A stretch of DNA of 63,694 bases, counting the filler, from Octopus bimaculoides (taxonomy: Eukaryota): assembly GCF_001194135.2 (NCBI RefSeq). It is 8 parts of 8 records of this genome, joined end to end, with 100 filler letters (N's around TTAATTAATTAA, not from the genome) between each part and the next. Parts side by side here need not be neighbours in the genome. Positions count along the whole stretch, not along the records: positions 15,951 to 30,973 come from NC_068983.1; 7 more parts are not named here. One strand, 5' to 3'. Below, piece by piece: positions 16,201-30,399 of the stretch (the first letter of the stretch is position 1; every line of letters begins with the position of its first letter). Both the position numbers and the translations under genes were made by a program. A model generated the notes under the pieces. It made no database searches and was not told where the DNA came from. It saw only the letters and a program-made list of their open reading frames with translations.

Positions 16201-17083
16201 TCAACCTTCAGCAAAAATAAGTCATGTATACATCTTGAACAGACATAAGTACATAAATACACGTTCACATGTACATACACATGTACACACACACGTCTAC
16301 ACATTTACCTAAATACTCACATACATACATACATACAGGCATGCACACATGCATACGCATGTACACACACACACACGTCATGAACTAACTATTACTTTCT
16401 CAGATGCAGCACGGGATTTTGTCAGTGAACAGGTCGCGGTCTCAAAGCGACGAAAATATTTTGGCAAATTAAATTTAAATGTTGAAGTAAATCTAACGGT
16501 TTTTGTGTGTTTTTAAATGGCTTATAAACACCTTCCACGCTGCAATTATATATATATATATAAAACAAATAATAAATGAGTATATGCATATATACGTACA
16601 GGTATGTGCATACCTACGTCTACCTGTATATATAGGTGCATATCTGGGTACAGGACATTGCAAACAAAACGTAGACAAGAAAATAATAATAACCAGAGTA
16701 CAGAAAACACACAAGCCACATAGAGAACATTTTCCTTCATCAGCTNNNNNNNNNNNNNNNNNNNNNNNNNNNNNNNNNNNNNNNNNNNNNNNNNNNNNNN
16801 NNNNNNNNNNNNNNNNNNNNNNNNNNNNNNNNNNNNNNNNNNNNNNNNNNNNNNNNNNNNNNNNNNNNNNNNNNNNNNNNNNNNNNNNNNNNNNNNNNNN
16901 NNNNNNNNNNNNNNNNNNNNNNNNNNNNNNNNNNNNNNNNNNNNNNNGGCGTTTCGAAGTCAGGAAAACAAACGGAAAAGAAAACAAGACAGGAAAACAA
17001 ACGGAAAAGGCTATGCGGCCAGACGTGAAAAATTATGTGTATATGAACGCTGTGAGGCACGAACTGAAAAAGACGGGACGAAG

Positions 17084-17867: not shown

Positions 17868-18724
17868 NNNNNNNNNNNNNNNNNNNNNNNNNNNNNNNNN
17901 NNNNNNNNNNNNNNNNNNNNNNNNNNNNNNNNNNNNNNNNNNNNNNNNNNNNNNNNNNNNNNNNNNNNNNNNNNNNNNNNNNNNNNNNNNNNNNNNNNNN
18001 NNNNNNNNNNNNNNNNNNNNNNNNNNNNNNNNNNNNNNNNNNNNNNNNNNNNNNNNNNNNNNNNNNNNNNNNNNNNNNNNNNNNNNNNNNNNNNNNNNNN
18101 NNNNNNNNNNNNNNNNNNNNNNNNNNNNNNNNNNNNNNNNNNNNNNNNNNNNNNNNNNNNNNNNNNNNNNNNNNNNNNNNNNNNNNNNNNNNNNNNNNNN
18201 NNNNNNNNNNNNNNNNNNNNNNNNNNNNNNNNNNNNNNNNNNNNNNNNNNNNNNNNNNNNNNNNNNNNNNNNNNNNNNNNNNNNNNNNNNNNNNNNNNNN
18301 NNNNNNNNNNNNNNNNNNNNNNNNNNNNNNNNNNNNNNNNNNNNNNNNNNNNNNNNNNNNNNNNNNNNNNNNNNNNNNNNNNNNNNNNNNNNNNNNNNNN
18401 NNNNNNNNNNNNNNNNNNNNNNNNNNNNNNNNNNNNNNNNNNNNNNNNNNNNNNNNNNNNNNNNNNNNNNNNNNNNNNNNNNNNNNNNNNNNNNNNNNNN
18501 NNNNNNNNNNNNNNNNNNNNNNNNNNNNNNNNNNNNNNNNNNNNNNNNNNNNNNNNNNNNNNNNNNNNNNNNNNNNNNNNNNNNNNNNNNNNNNNNNNNN
18601 NNNNNNNNNNNNNNNNNNNNNNNNNNNNNNNNNNNNNNNNNNNNNNNNNNNNNNNNNNNNNNNNNNNNNNNNNNNNNNNNNNNNNNNNNNNNNNNNNNNN
18701 NNNNNNNNNNNNNNNNNNNNNNNN

Positions 18725-20351: not shown

Positions 20352-20557
20352 TGTGTAATTCTCCGTCACAGCATATGAATGAGAAAGGGAGGGGTTTATA
20401 GATGAATAAGGAAGGAAGGTGTGATGGCAAATTTGGTAGTGGGATAATGGAAGTTTGTGTCTTTCTCCGTCACAACATCTGAATGAGAAAGGAAGGGGTG
20501 ATGGCAAACTTGGTAGTGGGATGATGGAAGTCGTACAGTGAAAAAAAAATCAAACAG
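20352..20557 (+). repeat. ~205-bp direct repeat, copy 1, with internal duplication
   Basis: ttctccgtcaca.catat.aatgagaaaggga..ggcaaa.ttggtagtggga occurs twice within the copy; second copy at 22814-23018. Confidence 0.9.
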
Positions 20558-21377: not shown

Positions 21378-22097
21378 TATATATATATGTGTGTATATAT
21401 ATATATATNNNNNNNNNNNNNNNNNNNNNNNNNNNNNNNNNNNNNNNNNNNNNNNNNNNNNNNNNNNNNNNNNNNNNNNNNNNNNNNNNNNNNNNNNNNN
21501 NNNNNNNNNNNNNNNNNNNNNNNNNNNNNNNNNNNNNNNNNNNNNNNNNNNNNNNNNNNNNNNNNNNNNNNNNNNNNNNNNNNNNNNNNNNNNNNNNNNN
21601 NNNNNNNNNNNNNNNNNNNNNNNNNNNNNNNNNNNNNNNNNNNNNNNNNNNNNNNNNNNNNNNNNNNNNNNNNNNNNNNNNNNNNNNNNNNNNNNNNNNN
21701 NNNNNNNNNNNNNNNNNNNNNNNNNNNNNNNNNNNNNNNNNNNNNNNNNNNNNNNNNNNNNNNNNNNNNNNNNNNNNNNNNNNNNNNNNNNNNNNNNNNN
21801 NNNNNNNNNNNNNNNNNNNNNNNNNNNNNNNNNNNNNNNNNNNNNNNNNNNNNNNNNNNNNNNNNNNNNNNNNNNNNNNNNNNNNNNNNNNNNNNNNNNN
21901 NNNNNNNNNNNNNNNNNNNNNNNNNNNNNNNNNNNNNNNNNNNNNNNNNNNNNNNNNNNNNNNNNNNNNNNNNNNNNNNNNNNNNNNNNNNNNNNNNNNN
22001 NNNNNNNNNNNNNNNNNNNNNNNNNNNNNNNNNNNNNNNNNNNNNAATATGACTATCATACACGCAGTAGAACAATGTAACCTGAATTGGCTAAAGC

Positions 22098-22813: not shown

Positions 22814-23018
22814 TGTGTATTTCTCCGTCACAACATATAAATGAGAAAGGGAGGAGTTTGTAGATGAATAAGGAAGGAAGGGGTGGTGGCAAACTTGGTA
22901 GTGGGATAATAGAAGTTTGTGTCTTTCTCTGTCACAACATCTGAATGAGAAAAGAAGGGGTGATGGCACACTTGGTAGTGGGATGATGGAAGTCGTACGG
23001 TGAAAACAAATCAAACAG
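22814..23018 (+). repeat. ~205-bp direct repeat, copy 2
   Basis: Highly similar to 20352-20557; starts 3 bp after the Merlin-like TSD. Confidence 0.9.
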
Positions 23019-23654
23019 AGGTTCATCGAAAAAAAAAAAAATTCCAATAAATCCGGGGCCGTAGGGGGGTCCCATTCACCATCCCCCTACCTTTTCTCGA
23101 ACCAAAATAAGGGATTTGCAGCTTATTAAGTCAGGGATTCCACACAAAAAAGTTTTTTTTTTTTTTTTTAGTGAAAATCGTGCGGGTGTTACTCTGAAAA
23201 ATTACCCAATTAGCCGTCATTTTTGTTGGCACGGGGCAAGATAGTATTATAATAATTTATCTGTGTAAACACATGAAAGTACTTAGCAATGAGAGAGGGA
23301 AAGTGGCAAAGAGAGTGCCAATAACGAATATAAAACTCATATGAATTATACTACACTAATCTTGGGATTGCCGGTAAAGTTCAAATACTTTCTCTTGAAA
23401 ACATACCCTCCTGAGACATGATAAATAGAAATTAGTATCAAAGATCCTCGTGATACTTGAGTGCCACAACGAACGCAATTTTAAGTTGTTAGTAATGTCT
23501 CCTCAGTTTACTGGTGTGTACAGTTTGACTGGAAGGCCGGTTTATAACGCGAGTTTAAATTTTACGTCTGCTTCCAATTACATATATTACGATAAGTGTC
23601 AAAAACAAGCACATGACAACGACTTCCATTACGTTGTCATAATTGAATGTAAAG

Positions 23655-23682
23655 ATTGCAAGCAAGAACAAACAAATTTAAT
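23655..23682 (-). terminator. Putative polyadenylation signal of the CCP gene
   Basis: Minus strand: TAA tgtac ATTAAA tttgtttgttcttgcttgc, i.e. a variant hexamer followed by a U/GU-rich tract. Confidence 0.35.
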
Positions 23683-23687
23683 GTACA

Positions 23688-25172
23688 TTAATCATTACAC
23701 TGCAGAACACAACAATGAGTAACTAATGAACCAGCATATATTTCTGATGTTACATTGTTAAAACCTACATTGACACAATGAAAGCGGGAACGAAACCCAC
23801 AGTTTACCCATTCGCATGATATCTGTCTGTAACCAAAGAATTCGCAAGTGTAATTTGTTTCACAAACAAAATGATTTGACGATTCATGGGTAAAAATGAC
23901 TTTGGAATCTATCAGCCGAATATCTGCATATGAACAGCGTGGTTTGGGGGTCAATACACCATTTTGACATATCACGTTATCGTTGGTGTTATTCACATAA
24001 GGAAGTTGACATGAATAAGTAACATTCGTGTTTTCTGTGACTGTGCTGCCAAACGGAAGATATTTCAAAGTGTCTGAATTTCGGTAGCCATATATGCCAA
24101 ACTCGGGTAACAATTGACAGTTCTTTACACACTGTGGAAGTTTTCCACTCCACGTTCCATTTTCTAAACAGGTTCTTTTAGAATCTCCCAGCAAAGTTTC
24201 TCCTGCTGAACAGCTATATTCAATAACTGAAAAATTATGTGACAAAATAAAATTTAATCCATGTAGTTTCTCAATTTTACACGTTTTTCTGCATTTTATG
24301 TCTGGGTACCATTTACCTGATAAGCATTGAACGACACCAAACGCGACAGGCATGAAAGATCGTTTGCAAGAATATAACACTTTCCCTCCTTGATTGATTA
24401 AGGTTCTTGGTTTTAAAATTGTACCTTCAGAAATAGTCACAACTCTACCAGCAATTTCAGGTACGACACATTTCAAAGTGCAAACAGGTGTCGGAAAGTT
24501 CCAGCTACCGTCTCGAAGACAAGTTAATACAGATTCACCTTTCAGATTATATGGTTTTAAGCAAGTGAAAGAAACTGTTTCGTTAACTTTAACTTCATTT
24601 GTATTGTTTATATTGCCATGTTTGGGTGGATGCAGTAGGAGACATTTAACAATTTCACAAGCTGGTGGTAGAGACGACCACTGCTGATTTTCTTGACACC
24701 GTATTGAATTGTTTCCTCGCAAAATATAATCAGAAACACAGGAAAAGTGAATAACAGAGTTATATGTGTATGCAACATTTGTCATGAAACTGTGTGCAGG
24801 TTTATGAAAAATGGGGCAGGTTATTAACTTACATTTTTTATCTTCATACATCCATTTACCATTCCAACAAATAATATCGGCCGTATTCTCTACGCTTGCT
24901 TCAAAATTGCGGTTGCACTTTTGTTGCAGGTGTATTTTTTCCTCTTCCCATTTCAAAGTATATTGTATTCGACTGTTGTTCAATTTCGGTAAAGGACCAC
25001 AGTTTAGGAGTTTTATCATTTGTTCAAAAAACCACGGAGCGTAGTTGTTGCAGGTTGACGTCGAATTACTGTATTCCGACACAATCTTTTTCATAACATT
25101 TCCCAACGTATTATTTTCACTTTTCACTGTTAATATAATTAAGAAAAGGAAAAAAAATGTCCTGGATACCAT
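23688..25172 (-). CDS. Intronless secreted protein, 494 aa: signal peptide + 6 CCP/sushi (SCR) modules + Cys-rich C-terminal domain
   Basis: Uninterrupted 1485-bp ORF. Hydrophobic N-terminus MVSRTFFFLFLIILTVKS/E. Six modules with the CCP pattern C...C...C...W...C (e.g. CPIF..FSC..IRC..QQWSSLPPAC; CLLL..FTC..LTC..GSWNFPTPVC; CKIE..YSC..RTCLENGTWSGKLPQC). 12 N-x-S/T sequons. No C-terminal TM or GPI stretch. Start context gagATGG. Confidence 0.92.
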   Translation of the reverse strand: MVSRTFFFLFLIILTVKSENNTLGNVMKKIVSEYSNSTSTCNNYAPWFFEQMIKLLNCGPLPKLNNSRIQYTLKWEEEKIHLQQKCNRNFEASVENTADIICWNGKWMYEDKKCKLITCPIFHKPAHSFMTNVAYTYNSVIHFSCVSDYILRGNNSIRCQENQQWSSLPPACEIVKCLLLHPPKHGNINNTNEVKVNETVSFTCLKPYNLKGESVLTCLRDGSWNFPTPVCTLKCVVPEIAGRVVTISEGTILKPRTLINQGGKVLYSCKRSFMPVAFGVVQCLSGKWYPDIKCRKTCKIEKLHGLNFILSHNFSVIEYSCSAGETLLGDSKRTCLENGTWSGKLPQCVKNCQLLPEFGIYGYRNSDTLKYLPFGSTVTENTNVTYSCQLPYVNNTNDNVICQNGVLTPKPRCSYADIRLIDSKVIFTHESSNHFVCETNYTCEFFGYRQISCEWVNCGFRSRFHCVNVGFNNVTSEIYAGSLVTHCCVLQCND

Positions 25173-25269
25173 CTCTATGTTTTGATAAACTTTTTCTTAC
25201 ATGAAAAGGACTGTGGTTTGTAAAGTGTAGCTGCTTGCTCGTTTTAATTTCAATGTGTTTTTTAGTGCG

Positions 25270-25278
25270 CCTTTTATA
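25270..25278 (-). promoter_or_regulatory. TATA box of the CCP gene
   Basis: Minus strand reads TATAAAAGG about 100 nt upstream of the ATG at 25172, with a CATT initiator-like site near 25254. Confidence 0.55.
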
Positions 25279-25929
25279 CGCTCGCTAACCTTCCTCTCCT
25301 CCAATCCACAATTATTTCCGAGAAAACAATTTCGTTCAGTTTTGTTTTGAAATTGTGTCATTTTTCAGTTAGAGGGAGAATAGGGTGTATGAATAAAAGT
25401 AGTGGACGAGATTTCGACCAAGACTGTTTAACGTTATAGTCTGGCTTATGTTATAGCAAACCCTATTTTTACAAATGTTAGTGCGCACCATATTTGTACA
25501 AACTAATTTATATATGTTTTACGAATTATATTACCATTAGAACATCGGAATAAATTCCTTGTAGTATTTGTTCTGACTTTATACGTTCTGAATTCAAATC
25601 ACGCTAATATCATTTTTGCCTGTCATCCTTTTGGGGTCGACAAAATAAAGTATCATATAAATACTGTGGTCGATGCAACCGACTCATCCCTATCCCCTCA
25701 AAATTATTGAGCATGTGCCTAAATGAGAAGCCATAGCCCTTGTGGCCAATAAAACGAATTAATTATATTAAACAATATTTAGTGGTTCTGCTTTAGTTAA
25801 TGTGGATTAATGAGTGACTAGAGATCGTCTGAGTGGAAGTGGTATATGACCAGGTAGTTCTAACGGGTTAAATTCATAGGAATAATGGTAGAAAACGCAG
25901 GTAGAGAGGAAATATATTTGTGGGTCAGA

Positions 25930-27880
25930 CAGTAGCAGATCTGCTATAAAACTAATGAACCTTAAGATTCAGGGCCCCTTATTCTGGAGGGGCCCCTCTG
26001 AAGCAACTTAATTTTTTTCGTTCTGTCAATTATTATTTTTTTATTTTTTTTTTTTGTATTTTACCATGCAGTTTGCGTCTTAGTGGACGTCATCTCATAC
26101 TCCTACACAGTCTGCTGGTGTGGATTAACATAAAAATAAAGTACAAACGACTGACAGATGATTTGCTTTACTTGAATTATTTTGGAAACTTCAGCCCTAC
26201 CCCTCCCACTGTCAAATATGTCTACTACTACATCAGCACGGTAGAGGTAAGAATTCTTATTTTCACACCATTATTTAATGACCATTGAAAGGGTCTGCCT
26301 CCTAATTTTGGACTTCAGTAACAAAGCATTTTTTCTACTTTAAAAATTGTTTGAATATTACCTTGTACAAAATGAACAACTCTTCATTTATGACTATATA
26401 TTAAATTGTGGACCCTTAACTTCATCGATCTGTCTCACTGTGGCTAATGAAAATGGTACCCAATTTTTTTCACAGAGGTCTAGGCCCCAAGAGGAATAGC
26501 AATGTCTTCAAGAAAGTACTTAAGCGGATACCAGAAACGCCAACTCAAGGAAAAGCAATCTAATGAGATTTCTAAATGTCAAAAACTATCAAACTATTTT
26601 ACAATGTCAAGTAAAAGTTTGTCATCACCTGCAACTGAAACAACCCATACAAGAACCAGTGAAGTCAATGATAGGGTACAAACCACAAGTGCTCTGTTTA
26701 GCAATAATCAACCTACTCTTGACACTTTTGGTGCAGATAATGATCACGGTGGTCAAGAACTTCAAGAAAAGAGAGAGCAGAAAAGGGAAACAGGAAGCAA
26801 ATTTAGTCATTTCAAAGAAAACAGTGACCTGGCAAATTGGCCTGTAACAATTGATAATGATTTCATACAAAACTGTTTAATGCAAGACATCAGTTTTTTT
26901 TTGTTTTTTTTTTAAATAAAATAAAACAGATAATGTATATATTGAATCCAACAAGATTTACAAACTGCAAAATCGAAGTTTCTTAAAGTACTTTGAAAAA
27001 AAAATTGAAAAATGGTCAGACTGTGATGAGATCCTGGTTAGTTTACTCAAAGAGCAAACTCTTTTCTAAATGCCAAATATCACTTACAATGGGTGGGTTT
27101 TCTGATTGGATGAATATACTCAGAACTCTAGAAAATCATGAAGACAGCATGGAACATAATAGGGCGCTGTTGAGCTGGCTAACACAAAAGTTAAATAAAA
27201 ACACTATGGATCAGCAACTTAAGGAACAGTTGAGAAAAAACATGCAGCACTATTTTGAAGTACTAAAAATAGTTGTAGCAGTTATAAAGTTCTTAAATGA
27301 AATGGGTTTAGCATTTAGAGGTCATGAAAAAAAGTGGGGCTCCACCACAAAGAATGGAAATGTCTTGGGGGTCATTGAGTTTATTCCAGAATTTGACCTA
27401 TTTTTACATGAACATTTAGAGAAATGTAAAAATGAAAAAGTAAATATTACTTACCTATCCAAATCTGTGTATGAAGAATTGATAGAAATCATGGGAAAAT
27501 GTGAAACAGGAAGTGGTGAATCAGATCAACAACCTAGACATCAAATACAACTCAGTTATTGTTGACTCTACACTTAACACAACACATGTTGACCAGCTGG
27601 TAATTGTGGTTCGATATTGTTATAATGGAAAACCCTGTGAGAGATTTTTAGCATTTCTACCAATAGAAAAACATTAATCTCTGACTTTGTTCAACAAAAT
27701 GACAATTTCTGAGGGAGCATAAGCTTTCAATTGAAAATATCCGTGGTCATAATGCTTTCAACATGATAATGCTTTCAACATGAAGGGCTCGTAGAAAGGG
27801 CTGCAAGCAGTTCTTAAAAACATTAACAGGTATGCAGACTATGTACCATGTGCAAACCATTCACTCAGCCTTGTTTGGTA
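25930..27880 (+). mobile_element. hAT transposon (ZMYM1/DUF4371-like transposase), 3'-truncated and decayed
   Basis: TIR-like CAGTAGCAGATCT at 25930. MSSRKYLSGYQKR, GLAFRGH, NGNVLGVIE, YLSKSVYEELI, SVIVDST..HVDQLVIVVRY, DNAFNMKG, YVPCANHSL (CxxH), with stops and frameshifts. Confidence 0.9.
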
Positions 27881-29899: not shown

Positions 29900-30068
29900 T
29901 CGGTGGTTGTCTACTCCTCACACAGAGTTTGACCACTTCCTGTACCTATACCTTAGCCCTTTCATGGCGTCTGATGTGGCTTTTTAAACCAGAGAGTGTT
30001 TTGAAAAAACACCCACACAGATTGCACCTCTGATTTGCACTACCAATACCTGCAAGTAAGTTCTGCTC
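29900..30068 (-). mobile_element. RTE-type LINE 3' end with C2H2 finger
   Basis: CNLCGCFFKTLSGLKSHIRRH followed by a stop, isolated between microsatellites. Confidence 0.55.
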
Positions 30069-30112
30069 ATACATACATACATACATACATACATACATAC
30101 ATACATACATAC

Positions 30113-30219
30113 AAAAAACCCGTTGATATTGTTGAAATTCCAATGAAGAAGCCTGATTTAGATTAGAAATCGGCTCTTTCTCTTTGGAAAGAAATCTTGT
30201 AATAAAACTGAATGATGAC
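30113..30219 (-). repeat. ~110-bp interspersed core embedded in (TATG)n
   Basis: Matches 57321-57435 on the opposite strand; both copies are flanked on both sides by (TATG)n. Confidence 0.7.
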
Positions 30220-30253
30220 ATACATACATACATACATACATACATACATACAT

Positions 30254-30292
<39 letters not shown>

Positions 30293-30399
30293 CATACATA
30301 CATACATACATACATTACATGCATACAAACACACATAATTTCCACATAGACATAGACGTAGACCGACTCTACCTAGAACGAAAACAAGGTAGTAGAGGT

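What the first reader, a model, noticed from the sequence alone, without database searches (positions are those of the whole stretch)
23655..25278. Compact intronless gene for a secreted six-CCP protein
Seen: signal peptide, six sushi modules and the stop lie in one 1485-bp ORF, with TATAAAAGG ~100 nt upstream and ATTAAA 5 nt after the stop, giving a ~1.6-kb unit in a genome full of repeat-stuffed DNA. Established: metazoan CCP genes (RCA cluster, factor H, LEV-9/Hig) usually put modules in separate phase-1 exons. Inference: a retroposed or lineage-specific gene kept intact while all neighbouring TEs decayed; it may be a complement regulator or a secreted gland, egg or synaptic-matrix protein.
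Basis: partly seen in the sequence, partly recalled or inferred. Interest (0 to 1): 0.72.

Follow-up and report, generated by a model that had tools for sequence, protein, structure and literature searches.

The report
Octopus-only intronless six-sushi secreted gene
This is a real, intact, single-exon Octopus bimaculoides gene for a secreted protein made of six sushi (CCP) modules plus a fast-evolving cysteine-rich end-piece seen only in octopods; it belongs to a small family that keeps duplicating, and its function is still unknown.

Summary
Window 23688-25172 (minus strand) is one 494-codon ORF.

The source is Octopus bimaculoides chromosome CM046603.1. The gene belongs to a family found only in octopods: at least 4 intact copies in O. 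bimaculoides, at least 8 gene models in O. sinensis and 2 in Argonauta hians. All eight copies examined at the DNA level have an uninterrupted CDS, an in-frame stop just upstream of the ATG, and a TATA-like box 80-114 nt upstream. The ATTAAA after the stop is real but not conserved.

The copies share their promoter, so they arose by DNA duplication. This copy is not a fresh retrocopy. No intron-containing parent was found, so a retroposed founder can be neither shown nor excluded.

Deep dN/dS is 0.3-0.4, which indicates functional genes. The tail has no detectable homologue among 1.84 billion protein representatives and evolves much faster than the CCPs (dN/dS about 2.5 against the closest paralogue).

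Most likely it is a secreted recognition protein with a conserved CCP rod and a diversifying head. A complement-regulator role is unproven. RefSeq already models these genes under inconsistent automatic names, and no paper found describes the family.

The parts
23688..25172 (-). Complete single-exon CDS: 494 codons plus a TAA stop at 23688-23690
   Evidence: The identical 494-aa protein is on record on O. bimaculoides CM046603.1, with a gene range equal to the ORF.
25119..25172 (-). Signal peptide, residues 1-18 (MVSRTFFFLFLIILTVKS), with probable cleavage after VKS
   Evidence: It is the only strongly hydrophobic window in the protein, is predicted helical at residues 2-17, and is conserved in the family. 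The cleavage site is inferred from the -3/-1 rule.
25002..25118 (-). N-terminal non-CCP region, residues 19-57. Predicted as two helices at low confidence. Contains C41, a cysteine unique to this copy.
   Evidence: No Pfam family matches; I30, W47, Q51 and N57 are invariant.
24831..25001 (-). CCP1 (C58-C114), divergent
   Evidence: Cysteine pattern; Sushi 16.7 bits
24657..24818 (-). CCP2 (C119-C172), canonical
   Evidence: Sushi 42.3 bits
24480..24644 (-). CCP3 (C177-C231), canonical
   Evidence: Sushi 43.7 bits
24291..24470 (-). CCP4 (C235-C294), divergent
   Evidence: Sushi 15.8 bits; all four cysteines and W288 are invariant
24129..24281 (-). CCP5 (C298-C348), canonical and the most conserved module
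   Evidence: Sushi 32.6 bits; 63-98 % identity to the other family members
23934..24119 (-). CCP6 (C352-C413), divergent, lacking the consensus Trp
   Evidence: Sushi 16.5 bits
23691..23933 (-). Family-specific C-terminal domain, residues 414-494. It has 8 Cys, a conserved C-x5-C-x-FFGY motif and a CC-x3-C ending, and is otherwise hypervariable.
   Evidence: No Pfam family and no PDB sequence match. Only family members appear among 1.84e9 representatives. Not a CCP by hhalign. dN/dS is 2.5 against the closest paralogue.
25270..25278 (-). TATA box TATAAAAGG, starting 106 nt upstream of the ATG; probable core promoter
   Evidence: A TATA-like motif lies 80-114 nt upstream of the ATG in all eight copies, including both Argonauta genes.
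25305..25311 (-). Second conserved upstream block (TTGTGGA, within ATTGTGGATTGGAGGA), about 33 nt upstream of the TATA box
   Evidence: Present at -113 to -147 in the Octopus copies, as TTGAGGA in the copy on the other chromosome. No function has been tested.
23677..23682 (-). ATTAAA, beginning 6 nt after the stop; candidate poly(A) signal
   Evidence: It is the only canonical hexamer within 700 nt downstream. The closest paralogue shares it, but O. sinensis has CATAAA at that position and deeper paralogues have AATAAA at +90 to +125. The 3' end is unverified.
23033..25396 (-). Segment shared at 91.7 % identity with the closest paralogue (XP_014785378.1, about 68 kb away, opposite orientation): from -224 to +655 around the CDS
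   Evidence: The upstream limit coincides with a microsatellite and an assembly gap in the paralogue's locus.

Best explanation
The gene is an intact, autonomous, single-exon gene of Octopus bimaculoides. It has its own TATA promoter and encodes a soluble secreted glycoprotein of about 54 kDa before glycosylation. The protein consists of a signal peptide, a short N-terminal region, a rod of six CCP modules, and a unique 81-residue, 8-cysteine C-terminal domain.

It is one member of an octopod-restricted family. That family was already intronless and had already split into two lineages before Octopus and Argonauta diverged. It has kept expanding by DNA-level segmental duplication with birth-and-death turnover, and the window copy and its nearest paralogue are O. 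bimaculoides-specific duplicates.

Inferred mechanism: the protein acts outside the cell as a binding or recognition protein. The CCP rod, under purifying selection, would be the conserved scaffold or partner-binding part. The C-terminal domain keeps its cysteine framework but changes its surface under diversifying selection, so it would be the variable recognition head aimed at a fast-evolving target.

My leaning is humoral immune recognition or regulation. Gamete or reproductive recognition comes second, and a glandular secretion third.

Shown: gene structure, domain content, family distribution, mode of duplication and selection pattern. Inferred: secretion, glycosylation, binding role and biological context.
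For: - Structure: one ORF with an in-frame stop 27 nt upstream of the ATG. All eight genomic copies in three species have a CDS range equal to the ORF and an in-frame stop 6-57 nt upstream.
- Promoter: a TATA-like motif at -80 to -114 is conserved in all copies although dS exceeds 1.
- Domains: Sushi scores 105 bits, six modules are confirmed, and the AF2 model gives CCP-type beta modules. Foldseek returns factor H, CR2, beta2-GPI and CD46.
- Secretion: the only hydrophobic segment is N-terminal, there is no C-terminal anchor, and there are 12 N-glycosylation sequons, several of them conserved (N313 in 8 of 8).
- Family: 13 hits, with family members at 583 bits or more and the next hit at 317 bits. 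The tree has two clades, each with an Argonauta member.
- Mode of duplication: three copies lie within about 290 kb on one chromosome. Flanks including the promoter are shared, O. sinensis has a tandem pair 6.5 kb apart, and gene fragments lie nearby.
- Selection: whole-CDS dN/dS is 0.29-0.40 in the deep pairs. The tail gives 2.45, 1.34 and 1.46 in the three closest pairs, against 0.42-0.75 for the CCPs. There are 38 non-synonymous and 4 synonymous differences in the tail against the closest paralogue (one-sided Fisher p = 0.043; bootstrap 98 % above 1). The tail's N:S ratio exceeds the CCPs' at p = 0.04, 0.004 and 0.009.
- Integrity: the window copy has only one private change at otherwise invariant family positions.
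- Tail uniqueness.
Against: - I had no expression or protein data, and no paper mentions the family.
- Whole-gene dN/dS against the closest paralogue is 1.16 at dS 0.06. That is also what relaxed constraint on one young duplicate would give.
- The positive-selection signal rests on pairwise counts over 81 codons and is only marginally significant.
- The tail's fold is uncertain: pLDDT is about 84 in the best full-length model, but the five models range from 44 to 78 overall, and the tail modelled alone reaches only 52.
- Non-coding 5' or 3' exons cannot be excluded.
- Absence outside octopods rests on protein databases. I could not search squid, cuttlefish, vampire-squid or nautilus genomes directly.
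Confidence: 0.6

Rival explanations
1. It is a complement regulator in the RCA sense. A secreted CCP string would bind C3b-like opsonins and limit convertase activity in octopus haemolymph, and the tail would be an accessory or oligomerisation piece.
For: The best sequence and fold matches are CR1, CR2, factor H, CD46, DAF and the poxvirus complement inhibitors. The 3-4-residue linkers and the secreted, CCP-dominated architecture fit.
Against: Identity is only 17-28 % and aligns off register, as any CCP string would. No orthology exists outside octopods. The family duplicates and diverges fast, and its most variable part is a non-CCP domain that RCA proteins lack. No C3b-binding test was possible.
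Confidence: 0.15
2. It is a reproductive or glandular secretion (sperm-egg recognition, spermatophore, egg coat, salivary or skin gland) rather than an immune protein.
For: The family shows rapid evolution, lineage-specific tandem duplication, a secreted cysteine-rich product and a hypervariable terminal domain. These are typical of gamete-recognition and secretory-gland gene families (general knowledge).
Against: There is no tissue evidence of any kind. The argonaut eggcase-matrix and genome papers do not mention Sushi proteins. The cephalopod venom preprint reports Sushi only inside much larger multi-domain cephalotoxin-like proteins.
Confidence: 0.2
3. The window copy is a young, functionless duplicate or retrocopy that happens to keep its ORF.
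For: dN/dS against the nearest paralogue is 1.16 at dS 0.062. There is no expression evidence, and gene fragments lie around other copies.
Against: All 24 CCP cysteines and the tail cysteines are intact. Only one private change occurs at family-invariant sites, fewer than in any other copy. The excess of non-synonymous change is concentrated in the tail (dN/dS 2.45) and not in the CCPs (0.75). The TATA box and start context are intact. My own rough estimate is that about 2 stop codons per lineage would be expected under neutrality at this divergence.
Confidence: 0.07
4. The ORF is one large coding exon of a longer multi-exon gene.
For: Octopus genes often have very long introns, so distant exons would not be visible in a 15-kb piece. 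No transcript data were available.
Against: The ORF begins with a signal peptide directly after an in-frame stop and ends in a stop at the same place in every copy. Family gene models in three species are mostly full-length at 483-495 aa, with the gene range equal to the ORF; shorter, partial or one longer (787 aa) automatic models also exist. A conserved TATA box lies about 100 nt upstream.
Confidence: 0.04

Closest known systems
Vertebrate regulators of complement activation (factor H, CR1/CR2, CD46, DAF, C4BP)
   Same: They are strings of CCP modules with short linkers, secreted or on the cell surface, and give the best sequence and fold matches.
   Different: There is no orthology, only 17-28 % generic identity. 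RCA genes mostly have one CCP per exon (established knowledge), whereas this CDS is uninterrupted. The octopus protein carries a non-CCP C-terminal domain and an N-terminal region absent from RCA proteins. C3b binding is untested.
Beta2-glycoprotein I (apolipoprotein H)
   Same: It is a small secreted glycoprotein made of a short CCP string ending in an aberrant, extra-disulfide C-terminal module that carries the specific binding function. It is among the top Foldseek hits (ranks 4-11).
   Different: The last domain of beta2-GPI is a modified CCP. The octopus tail shows no detectable CCP relationship (hhalign probability 0.3 %). Beta2-GPI is a multi-exon vertebrate gene (established knowledge).
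Poxvirus complement control proteins (VCP/SPICE)
   Same: They are compact, intronless genes encoding secreted proteins made of CCPs, and they match in PDB searches.
   Different: They are viral genes of four CCPs with no extra domains. The octopus locus shows no sign of viral origin: no viral neighbours, and family members lie on two chromosomes in three species.
Intronless, tandemly arrayed lineage-specific gene expansions in molluscs (for example nAChR genes, PMC6896357)
   Same: The evolutionary pattern is the same: intron-poor genes, tandem arrays, lineage-specific copies and fast divergence.
   Different: For nAChRs, intron-rich parents are identifiable, so retroposition followed by tandem duplication is supported. 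Here no parent was found and the family is small (about 4-8 copies per species).
Secreted multi-CCP synaptic-matrix organisers (C. elegans LEV-9, Drosophila Hig/Hasp)
   Same: They are secreted proteins built mostly of CCP modules (my own knowledge; not tested here).
   Different: Those are conserved, slowly evolving genes of one or a few copies. This family is young, duplicating and fast-evolving, and no specific similarity was seen in any search.

Membership tests
CCP / Sushi / SCR domain proteins (Pfam PF00084) | Whole-protein HMM score above the curated threshold | tested here: met
   105 bits against a cut-off of 20.7, E = 2.6e-30
CCP / Sushi / SCR domain proteins (Pfam PF00084) | Modules of about 60 residues, each with four invariant cysteines and a conserved Trp between Cys III and Cys IV | tested here: met
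   There are six modules of 51-62 residues. All 24 cysteines are invariant in nine family sequences. The Trp is present in CCP1-5 and absent in CCP6. Scanned separately, three modules fall below the Pfam gathering score.
CCP / Sushi / SCR domain proteins (Pfam PF00084) | Beta-sandwich CCP fold arranged as beads on a string | tested here: met
   The AF2 model has pLDDT about 75-88 over the CCPs. Foldseek E-values fall to 8e-21 against factor H, CR2 and beta2-GPI. This is a prediction, not a solved structure.
Regulators of complement activation (RCA) | Extracellular part composed of CCP modules only | tested here: not met
   The 81-aa C-terminal domain and the 39-aa N-terminal region are not CCP.
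Regulators of complement activation (RCA) | Orthology or synteny with known RCA genes | tested here: not met
   No specific relatives exist outside octopods. The nearest other proteins show only off-register CCP similarity at 24-28 %.
Regulators of complement activation (RCA) | Binds C3b/C4b and has decay-accelerating or cofactor activity | not testable with these tools
   This needs recombinant protein and octopus C3/TEP assays.
Processed retrogene (retrocopy) | No introns where the parent gene has them | tested here: inconclusive
   The CDS is uninterrupted in all eight copies examined at the DNA level, but no intron-bearing parent was found for comparison.
Processed retrogene (retrocopy) | Poly(A) remnant directly after the transcript end, and flanking target-site duplications | tested here: not met
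   No A-tract follows the ATTAAA. The A17 run at +519 has no poly(A) signal in the 30 nt before it and follows a piece that recurs elsewhere. Target-site duplications were not searched for systematically.
Processed retrogene (retrocopy) | The copy lacks the parental promoter, so homology stops at the transcription start | tested here: not met
   Homology between copies runs 160-224 nt upstream of the ATG, past the conserved TATA box, even for the paralogue on another chromosome. This and other recent copies arose by DNA duplication.

The most novel reading that the evidence does not exclude
The family is an octopod invention. It would be a set of secreted recognition molecules in which a conserved six-CCP stalk presents a new, disulfide-framed, hypervariable 80-residue head domain that diversifies by tandem duplication and positive selection. 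That would make it a lineage-specific variable binding system for immunity or gamete recognition in an animal without antibodies.
Probability: 0.3. Interest if true: 0.6.

Novelty: new variant of a known kind. Interest (0 to 1): 0.38.

Why it matters
Cephalopods have no adaptive immunity, and their humoral recognition molecules and gamete-recognition proteins are poorly known. This family has a conserved CCP rod and a fast-diversifying, apparently novel head domain, and it is found only in octopods. That makes it a concrete, easily cloned (single-exon) candidate for either role.

It also adds a small, clean example of an intronless, tandemly duplicating lineage-specific family in a genome otherwise known for huge introns. 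It has a conserved TATA promoter that could be used in reporter work.

In practical terms, the current automatic names (SVEP1, CSMD3-like, factor H-like, P-selectin, clotting factor C) are misleading. They should be replaced by one family name.

Tried and rejected
1. Tail as a degenerate seventh CCP. BLASTP against P0013 laid part of the tail over a CCP. However, Pfam finds nothing in the tail, and profile-profile comparison of the tail alignment with the family's own CCP modules gives probability 0.3 %. Rejected as undetectable.

2. Tail fold identification. The tail modelled alone reached only pLDDT 52. Its Foldseek search gave nothing below E = 3.6, and the PDB sequence-profile search gave a best E of 2.4. 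No fold is assigned.

3. P0012/P0013 as an outgroup or parent. The similarity is generic, repeated CCP similarity without the N-terminal region or the tail, and the source organism is unidentified. Rejected as a parent.

4. A17 run in the 3' flank as a retrocopy poly(A) tail. It has no poly(A) signal just upstream, and the preceding 40 nt recur elsewhere in L002. It is more likely the end of a short interspersed repeat.

5. Literature. Searches by domain, taxon, accession, secretome and argonaut eggcase proteome found no description of the family.

6. Second profile search of the 5.8-billion-protein set. It returned the same 13 proteins, so the word-indexed search is exhausted. I did not use the third search.

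7. Overlapping plus-strand ORFs (23450-23722 and 24394-24687). These are short antisense ORFs inside or at the edge of the CDS. I did not search them and treated them as chance ORFs.
Full report

Yes. Window 23688..25172 on the minus strand is a single ORF of 494 codons plus TAA. At 36 % GC, an ORF of that length has a chance probability of about 3e-16 (my arithmetic from the composition).

Pfam gives Sushi at 105 bits against a cut-off of 20.7. The best PDB sequence matches are CR1, CR2, factor H, CD46 and beta2-glycoprotein I.

The cysteine pattern defines six modules: C58-114, C119-172, C177-231, C235-294, C298-348 and C352-413, with 3-4-residue linkers. Scanned one at a time, every module has Sushi as its best Pfam family. 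CCP2, 3 and 5 score 42, 44 and 33 bits. CCP1, 4 and 6 score only about 16 bits, so there are three canonical and three divergent modules.

TATAAAAGG sits at 25278..25270, 106 nt upstream of the ATG. ATTAAA sits at 23682..23677, beginning 6 nt after the stop.

First, residues 19-57 match no known family. Second, the last 81 residues (414-494) are also not CCP: they form a separate 8-cysteine region with no Pfam family.

**2. Where it comes from, and the family**

The identical protein is on record on Octopus bimaculoides chromosome CM046603.1 at about 98.36 Mb.

Homology searches return only 13 proteins. All the close ones are from Octopus bimaculoides, O. sinensis and Argonauta hians, at 583 bits or more. 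After a gap come two proteins at 317 bits from an unidentified eukaryotic contig. The similarity of those two is generic, off-register CCP periodicity.

Cluster look-ups add more O. sinensis models and an O. vulgaris model. They also show that the automatic names are inconsistent: SVEP1, CSMD3-like, factor H-like, P-selectin and clotting factor C. No paper in the searchable library cites these accessions or describes the family.

**3. Gene structure**

For eight genomic copies in three species, the recorded gene range equals the ORF, at 483-495 codons.

- Every copy has an in-frame stop 6-57 nt upstream of the ATG.
- Every copy has a purine at -3.
- Every copy has a TATA-like motif 80-114 nt upstream.

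This holds even though synonymous divergence between the deep copies exceeds 1. A second upstream block (TTGTGGA) is shared by the Octopus copies.

The gene is therefore a stand-alone unit with its own core promoter, and the uninterrupted CDS is ancestral to the family.

The 3' end is less clear. The ATTAAA is shared with the nearest paralogue but reads CATAAA in the O. sinensis orthologues. Deeper paralogues instead have AATAAA at +90 to +125. Non-coding exons cannot be excluded without transcripts.

**4. How the copies arose**

Three O. bimaculoides copies lie within about 290 kb on one chromosome, in mixed orientation, and a fourth is on another chromosome.

The window copy and its nearest paralogue (86 % aa identity, dS 0.06) share 2.4 kb, from -224 to +655. 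The copy on the other chromosome still aligns to -160, past the TATA box. O. sinensis has two nearly identical copies 6.5 kb apart (dS 0.01). Truncated fragments lie beside two other copies.

A neighbour-joining tree shows two old clades, each containing an Argonauta gene, plus species-specific recent duplicates.

This is DNA-level duplication with birth-and-death turnover, not repeated retroposition. No poly(A) remnant follows the candidate poly(A) signal. The A17 run at +519 follows a piece that recurs elsewhere and has no signal in front of it.

Whether the founder gene was a retrocopy cannot be decided, because no intron-bearing relative was found. The precedent for 'retroposition, then tandem duplication' in molluscs is the nAChR expansion (PMC6896357).

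**5. Selection**

I computed Nei-Gojobori estimates with my own script.

- Whole-CDS dN/dS is 0.29-0.40 for all deep pairs, so the family is under purifying selection.
- It is 0.58 against the O. sinensis orthologue and 1.16 against the nearest paralogue.
- The excess is localised. The six CCPs give 0.42-0.75 in the three closest pairs and the tail gives 2.45, 1.34 and 1.46.

Against the nearest paralogue the tail has 38 non-synonymous and 4 synonymous differences (one-sided Fisher p = 0.043; 98 % of bootstraps above 1). The tail's N:S ratio exceeds that of the CCPs in all three close comparisons (p = 0.04, 0.004 and 0.009).

Amino-acid identity to the window protein is 57-92 % in the CCPs and 22-65 % in the tail. 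Within the tail, C437, C443, F446, G447, C487, C488 and C492 are invariant.

The window copy has only one private substitution at family-invariant positions (P179L), fewer than any other copy. It therefore does not look like a decaying duplicate.

**6. The tail**

The tail has no recognisable relatives:

- no Pfam family;
- no PDB sequence match (best E = 2.4);
- no CCP relationship by profile-profile comparison (probability 0.3 %).

An exhaustive HMM search of 1.84 billion representative proteins returned only family members. The two further hits were spurious matches to short repeated motifs.

In the best full-length AlphaFold model the tail is a beta-rich unit at pLDDT about 84. However, the five models vary widely (mean pLDDT 44-78), and the tail modelled alone reaches only 52. 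Its Foldseek search is empty. The fold is therefore unassigned.

**7. What the protein probably does**

The only hydrophobic stretch is the N-terminal signal peptide, and there is no C-terminal anchor. There are 12 N-glycosylation sequons, several conserved (N313 in 8 of 8). The mature chain is about 54 kDa with a pI of 8.5. It is therefore a soluble secreted glycoprotein.

I infer an extracellular binding or recognition protein. The constrained CCP rod would be the scaffold or the site for a conserved partner. The cysteine-framed, hypervariable tail would be the specificity-determining head.

The pattern fits immune recognition or regulation. It fits gamete recognition nearly as well, and a glandular secretion cannot be excluded. 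None of these is shown.

A true RCA-type complement regulator is not supported. There is no orthology, the protein has extra non-CCP domains, and the similarity is generic. The activity itself could not be tested.

**8. Verdict**

It is not a recent retrocopy, and its function is open.

It is a new variant of a known kind: a CCP-string secreted protein with a new terminal domain, in an octopod-only intronless family. RefSeq already models the genes, but I found no description of the family in the papers I could search.

Interest is moderate. Intronless, tandemly duplicating lineage-specific families are a familiar pattern in molluscs. The diversifying, apparently novel head domain is the part worth following up.

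Noticed in passing
L008:10001-21800 and L009:10001-21800 (ENA assemblies ERZ25072384 and ERZ25073842): An unidentified eukaryote-like contig (36 % GC, up to 718 kb) carries at least three tandem, uninterrupted ORFs of about 600-640 aa. Each has many Sushi modules. They are interleaved with protein-kinase fragments and lie next to an 8092-aa cadherin ORF. Tandem arrays of uninterrupted multi-CCP ORFs therefore exist in another organism.
   Followed up: partly
window 26502-27565 (+): Two adjacent ORFs of 137 and 190 aa. The second has a sub-threshold DUF4371 hit (E = 0.1; from memory a hAT/ZMYM1-type transposase region). They may be the remains of a decayed transposon about 1.3 kb upstream of the gene's promoter.
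   Followed up: partly
L003:5351-6123 (-) and L002:12508-12823 (+): Truncated family copies. One joins residues 7-103 directly to 315-493 (about 49 % identity), 4 kb upstream of XP_014773178. The other holds only the end of CCP6 plus the tail (44-55 %), 1 kb downstream of XP_014785378. They are either debris of birth-and-death turnover or shorter paralogues.
   Followed up: partly
L005:3505-4992 and L005:10001-11485 (O. sinensis CM016861.1): Two nearly identical copies (dS 0.01) lie 6.5 kb apart in head-to-tail orientation. This is either a very recent tandem duplication or an assembly duplication.
   Followed up: no
window 23153-23169 (T17 on the + strand; A17 on the gene strand, 519-535 nt after the stop): An A-run shared by the four closest copies. 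The 40 nt before it recur elsewhere in L002, so it looks like the tail of a short interspersed repeat inserted in the 3' flank before the recent duplications.
   Followed up: partly
window 25050-25052 (codon 41): The window copy has a cysteine at residue 41, where the other family members have D, K, E or N. That gives an odd total of 33 cysteines, so there may be a free thiol or an intermolecular disulfide unique to this copy.
   Followed up: no
window 25197-25202 (gene strand, 25-30 nt upstream of the ATG): A minimal upstream ORF (ATG followed directly by TAA) lies in the presumed 5' UTR. The ATG reads GTG in the closest paralogue, so it is not conserved there.
   Followed up: no
window 29946-30311 (-), and N runs at 16746-16947, 17868-18724 and 21409-22045: An ORF ending in a C2H2-zinc-finger-like fragment (CNLCGCFFKTLSGLKSHIRRH) is embedded in a short tandem repeat that translates as MYVC/VCVC. 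Three assembly gaps are flanked by short simple-sequence repeats (translated as YIYI and HTHT/VCVC runs).
   Followed up: no
window 20439-20557 and 22901-23018: A 119-bp segment is repeated at 94 % identity 2.4 kb apart, downstream of the gene. It is also present in the O. sinensis orthologous region.
   Followed up: no
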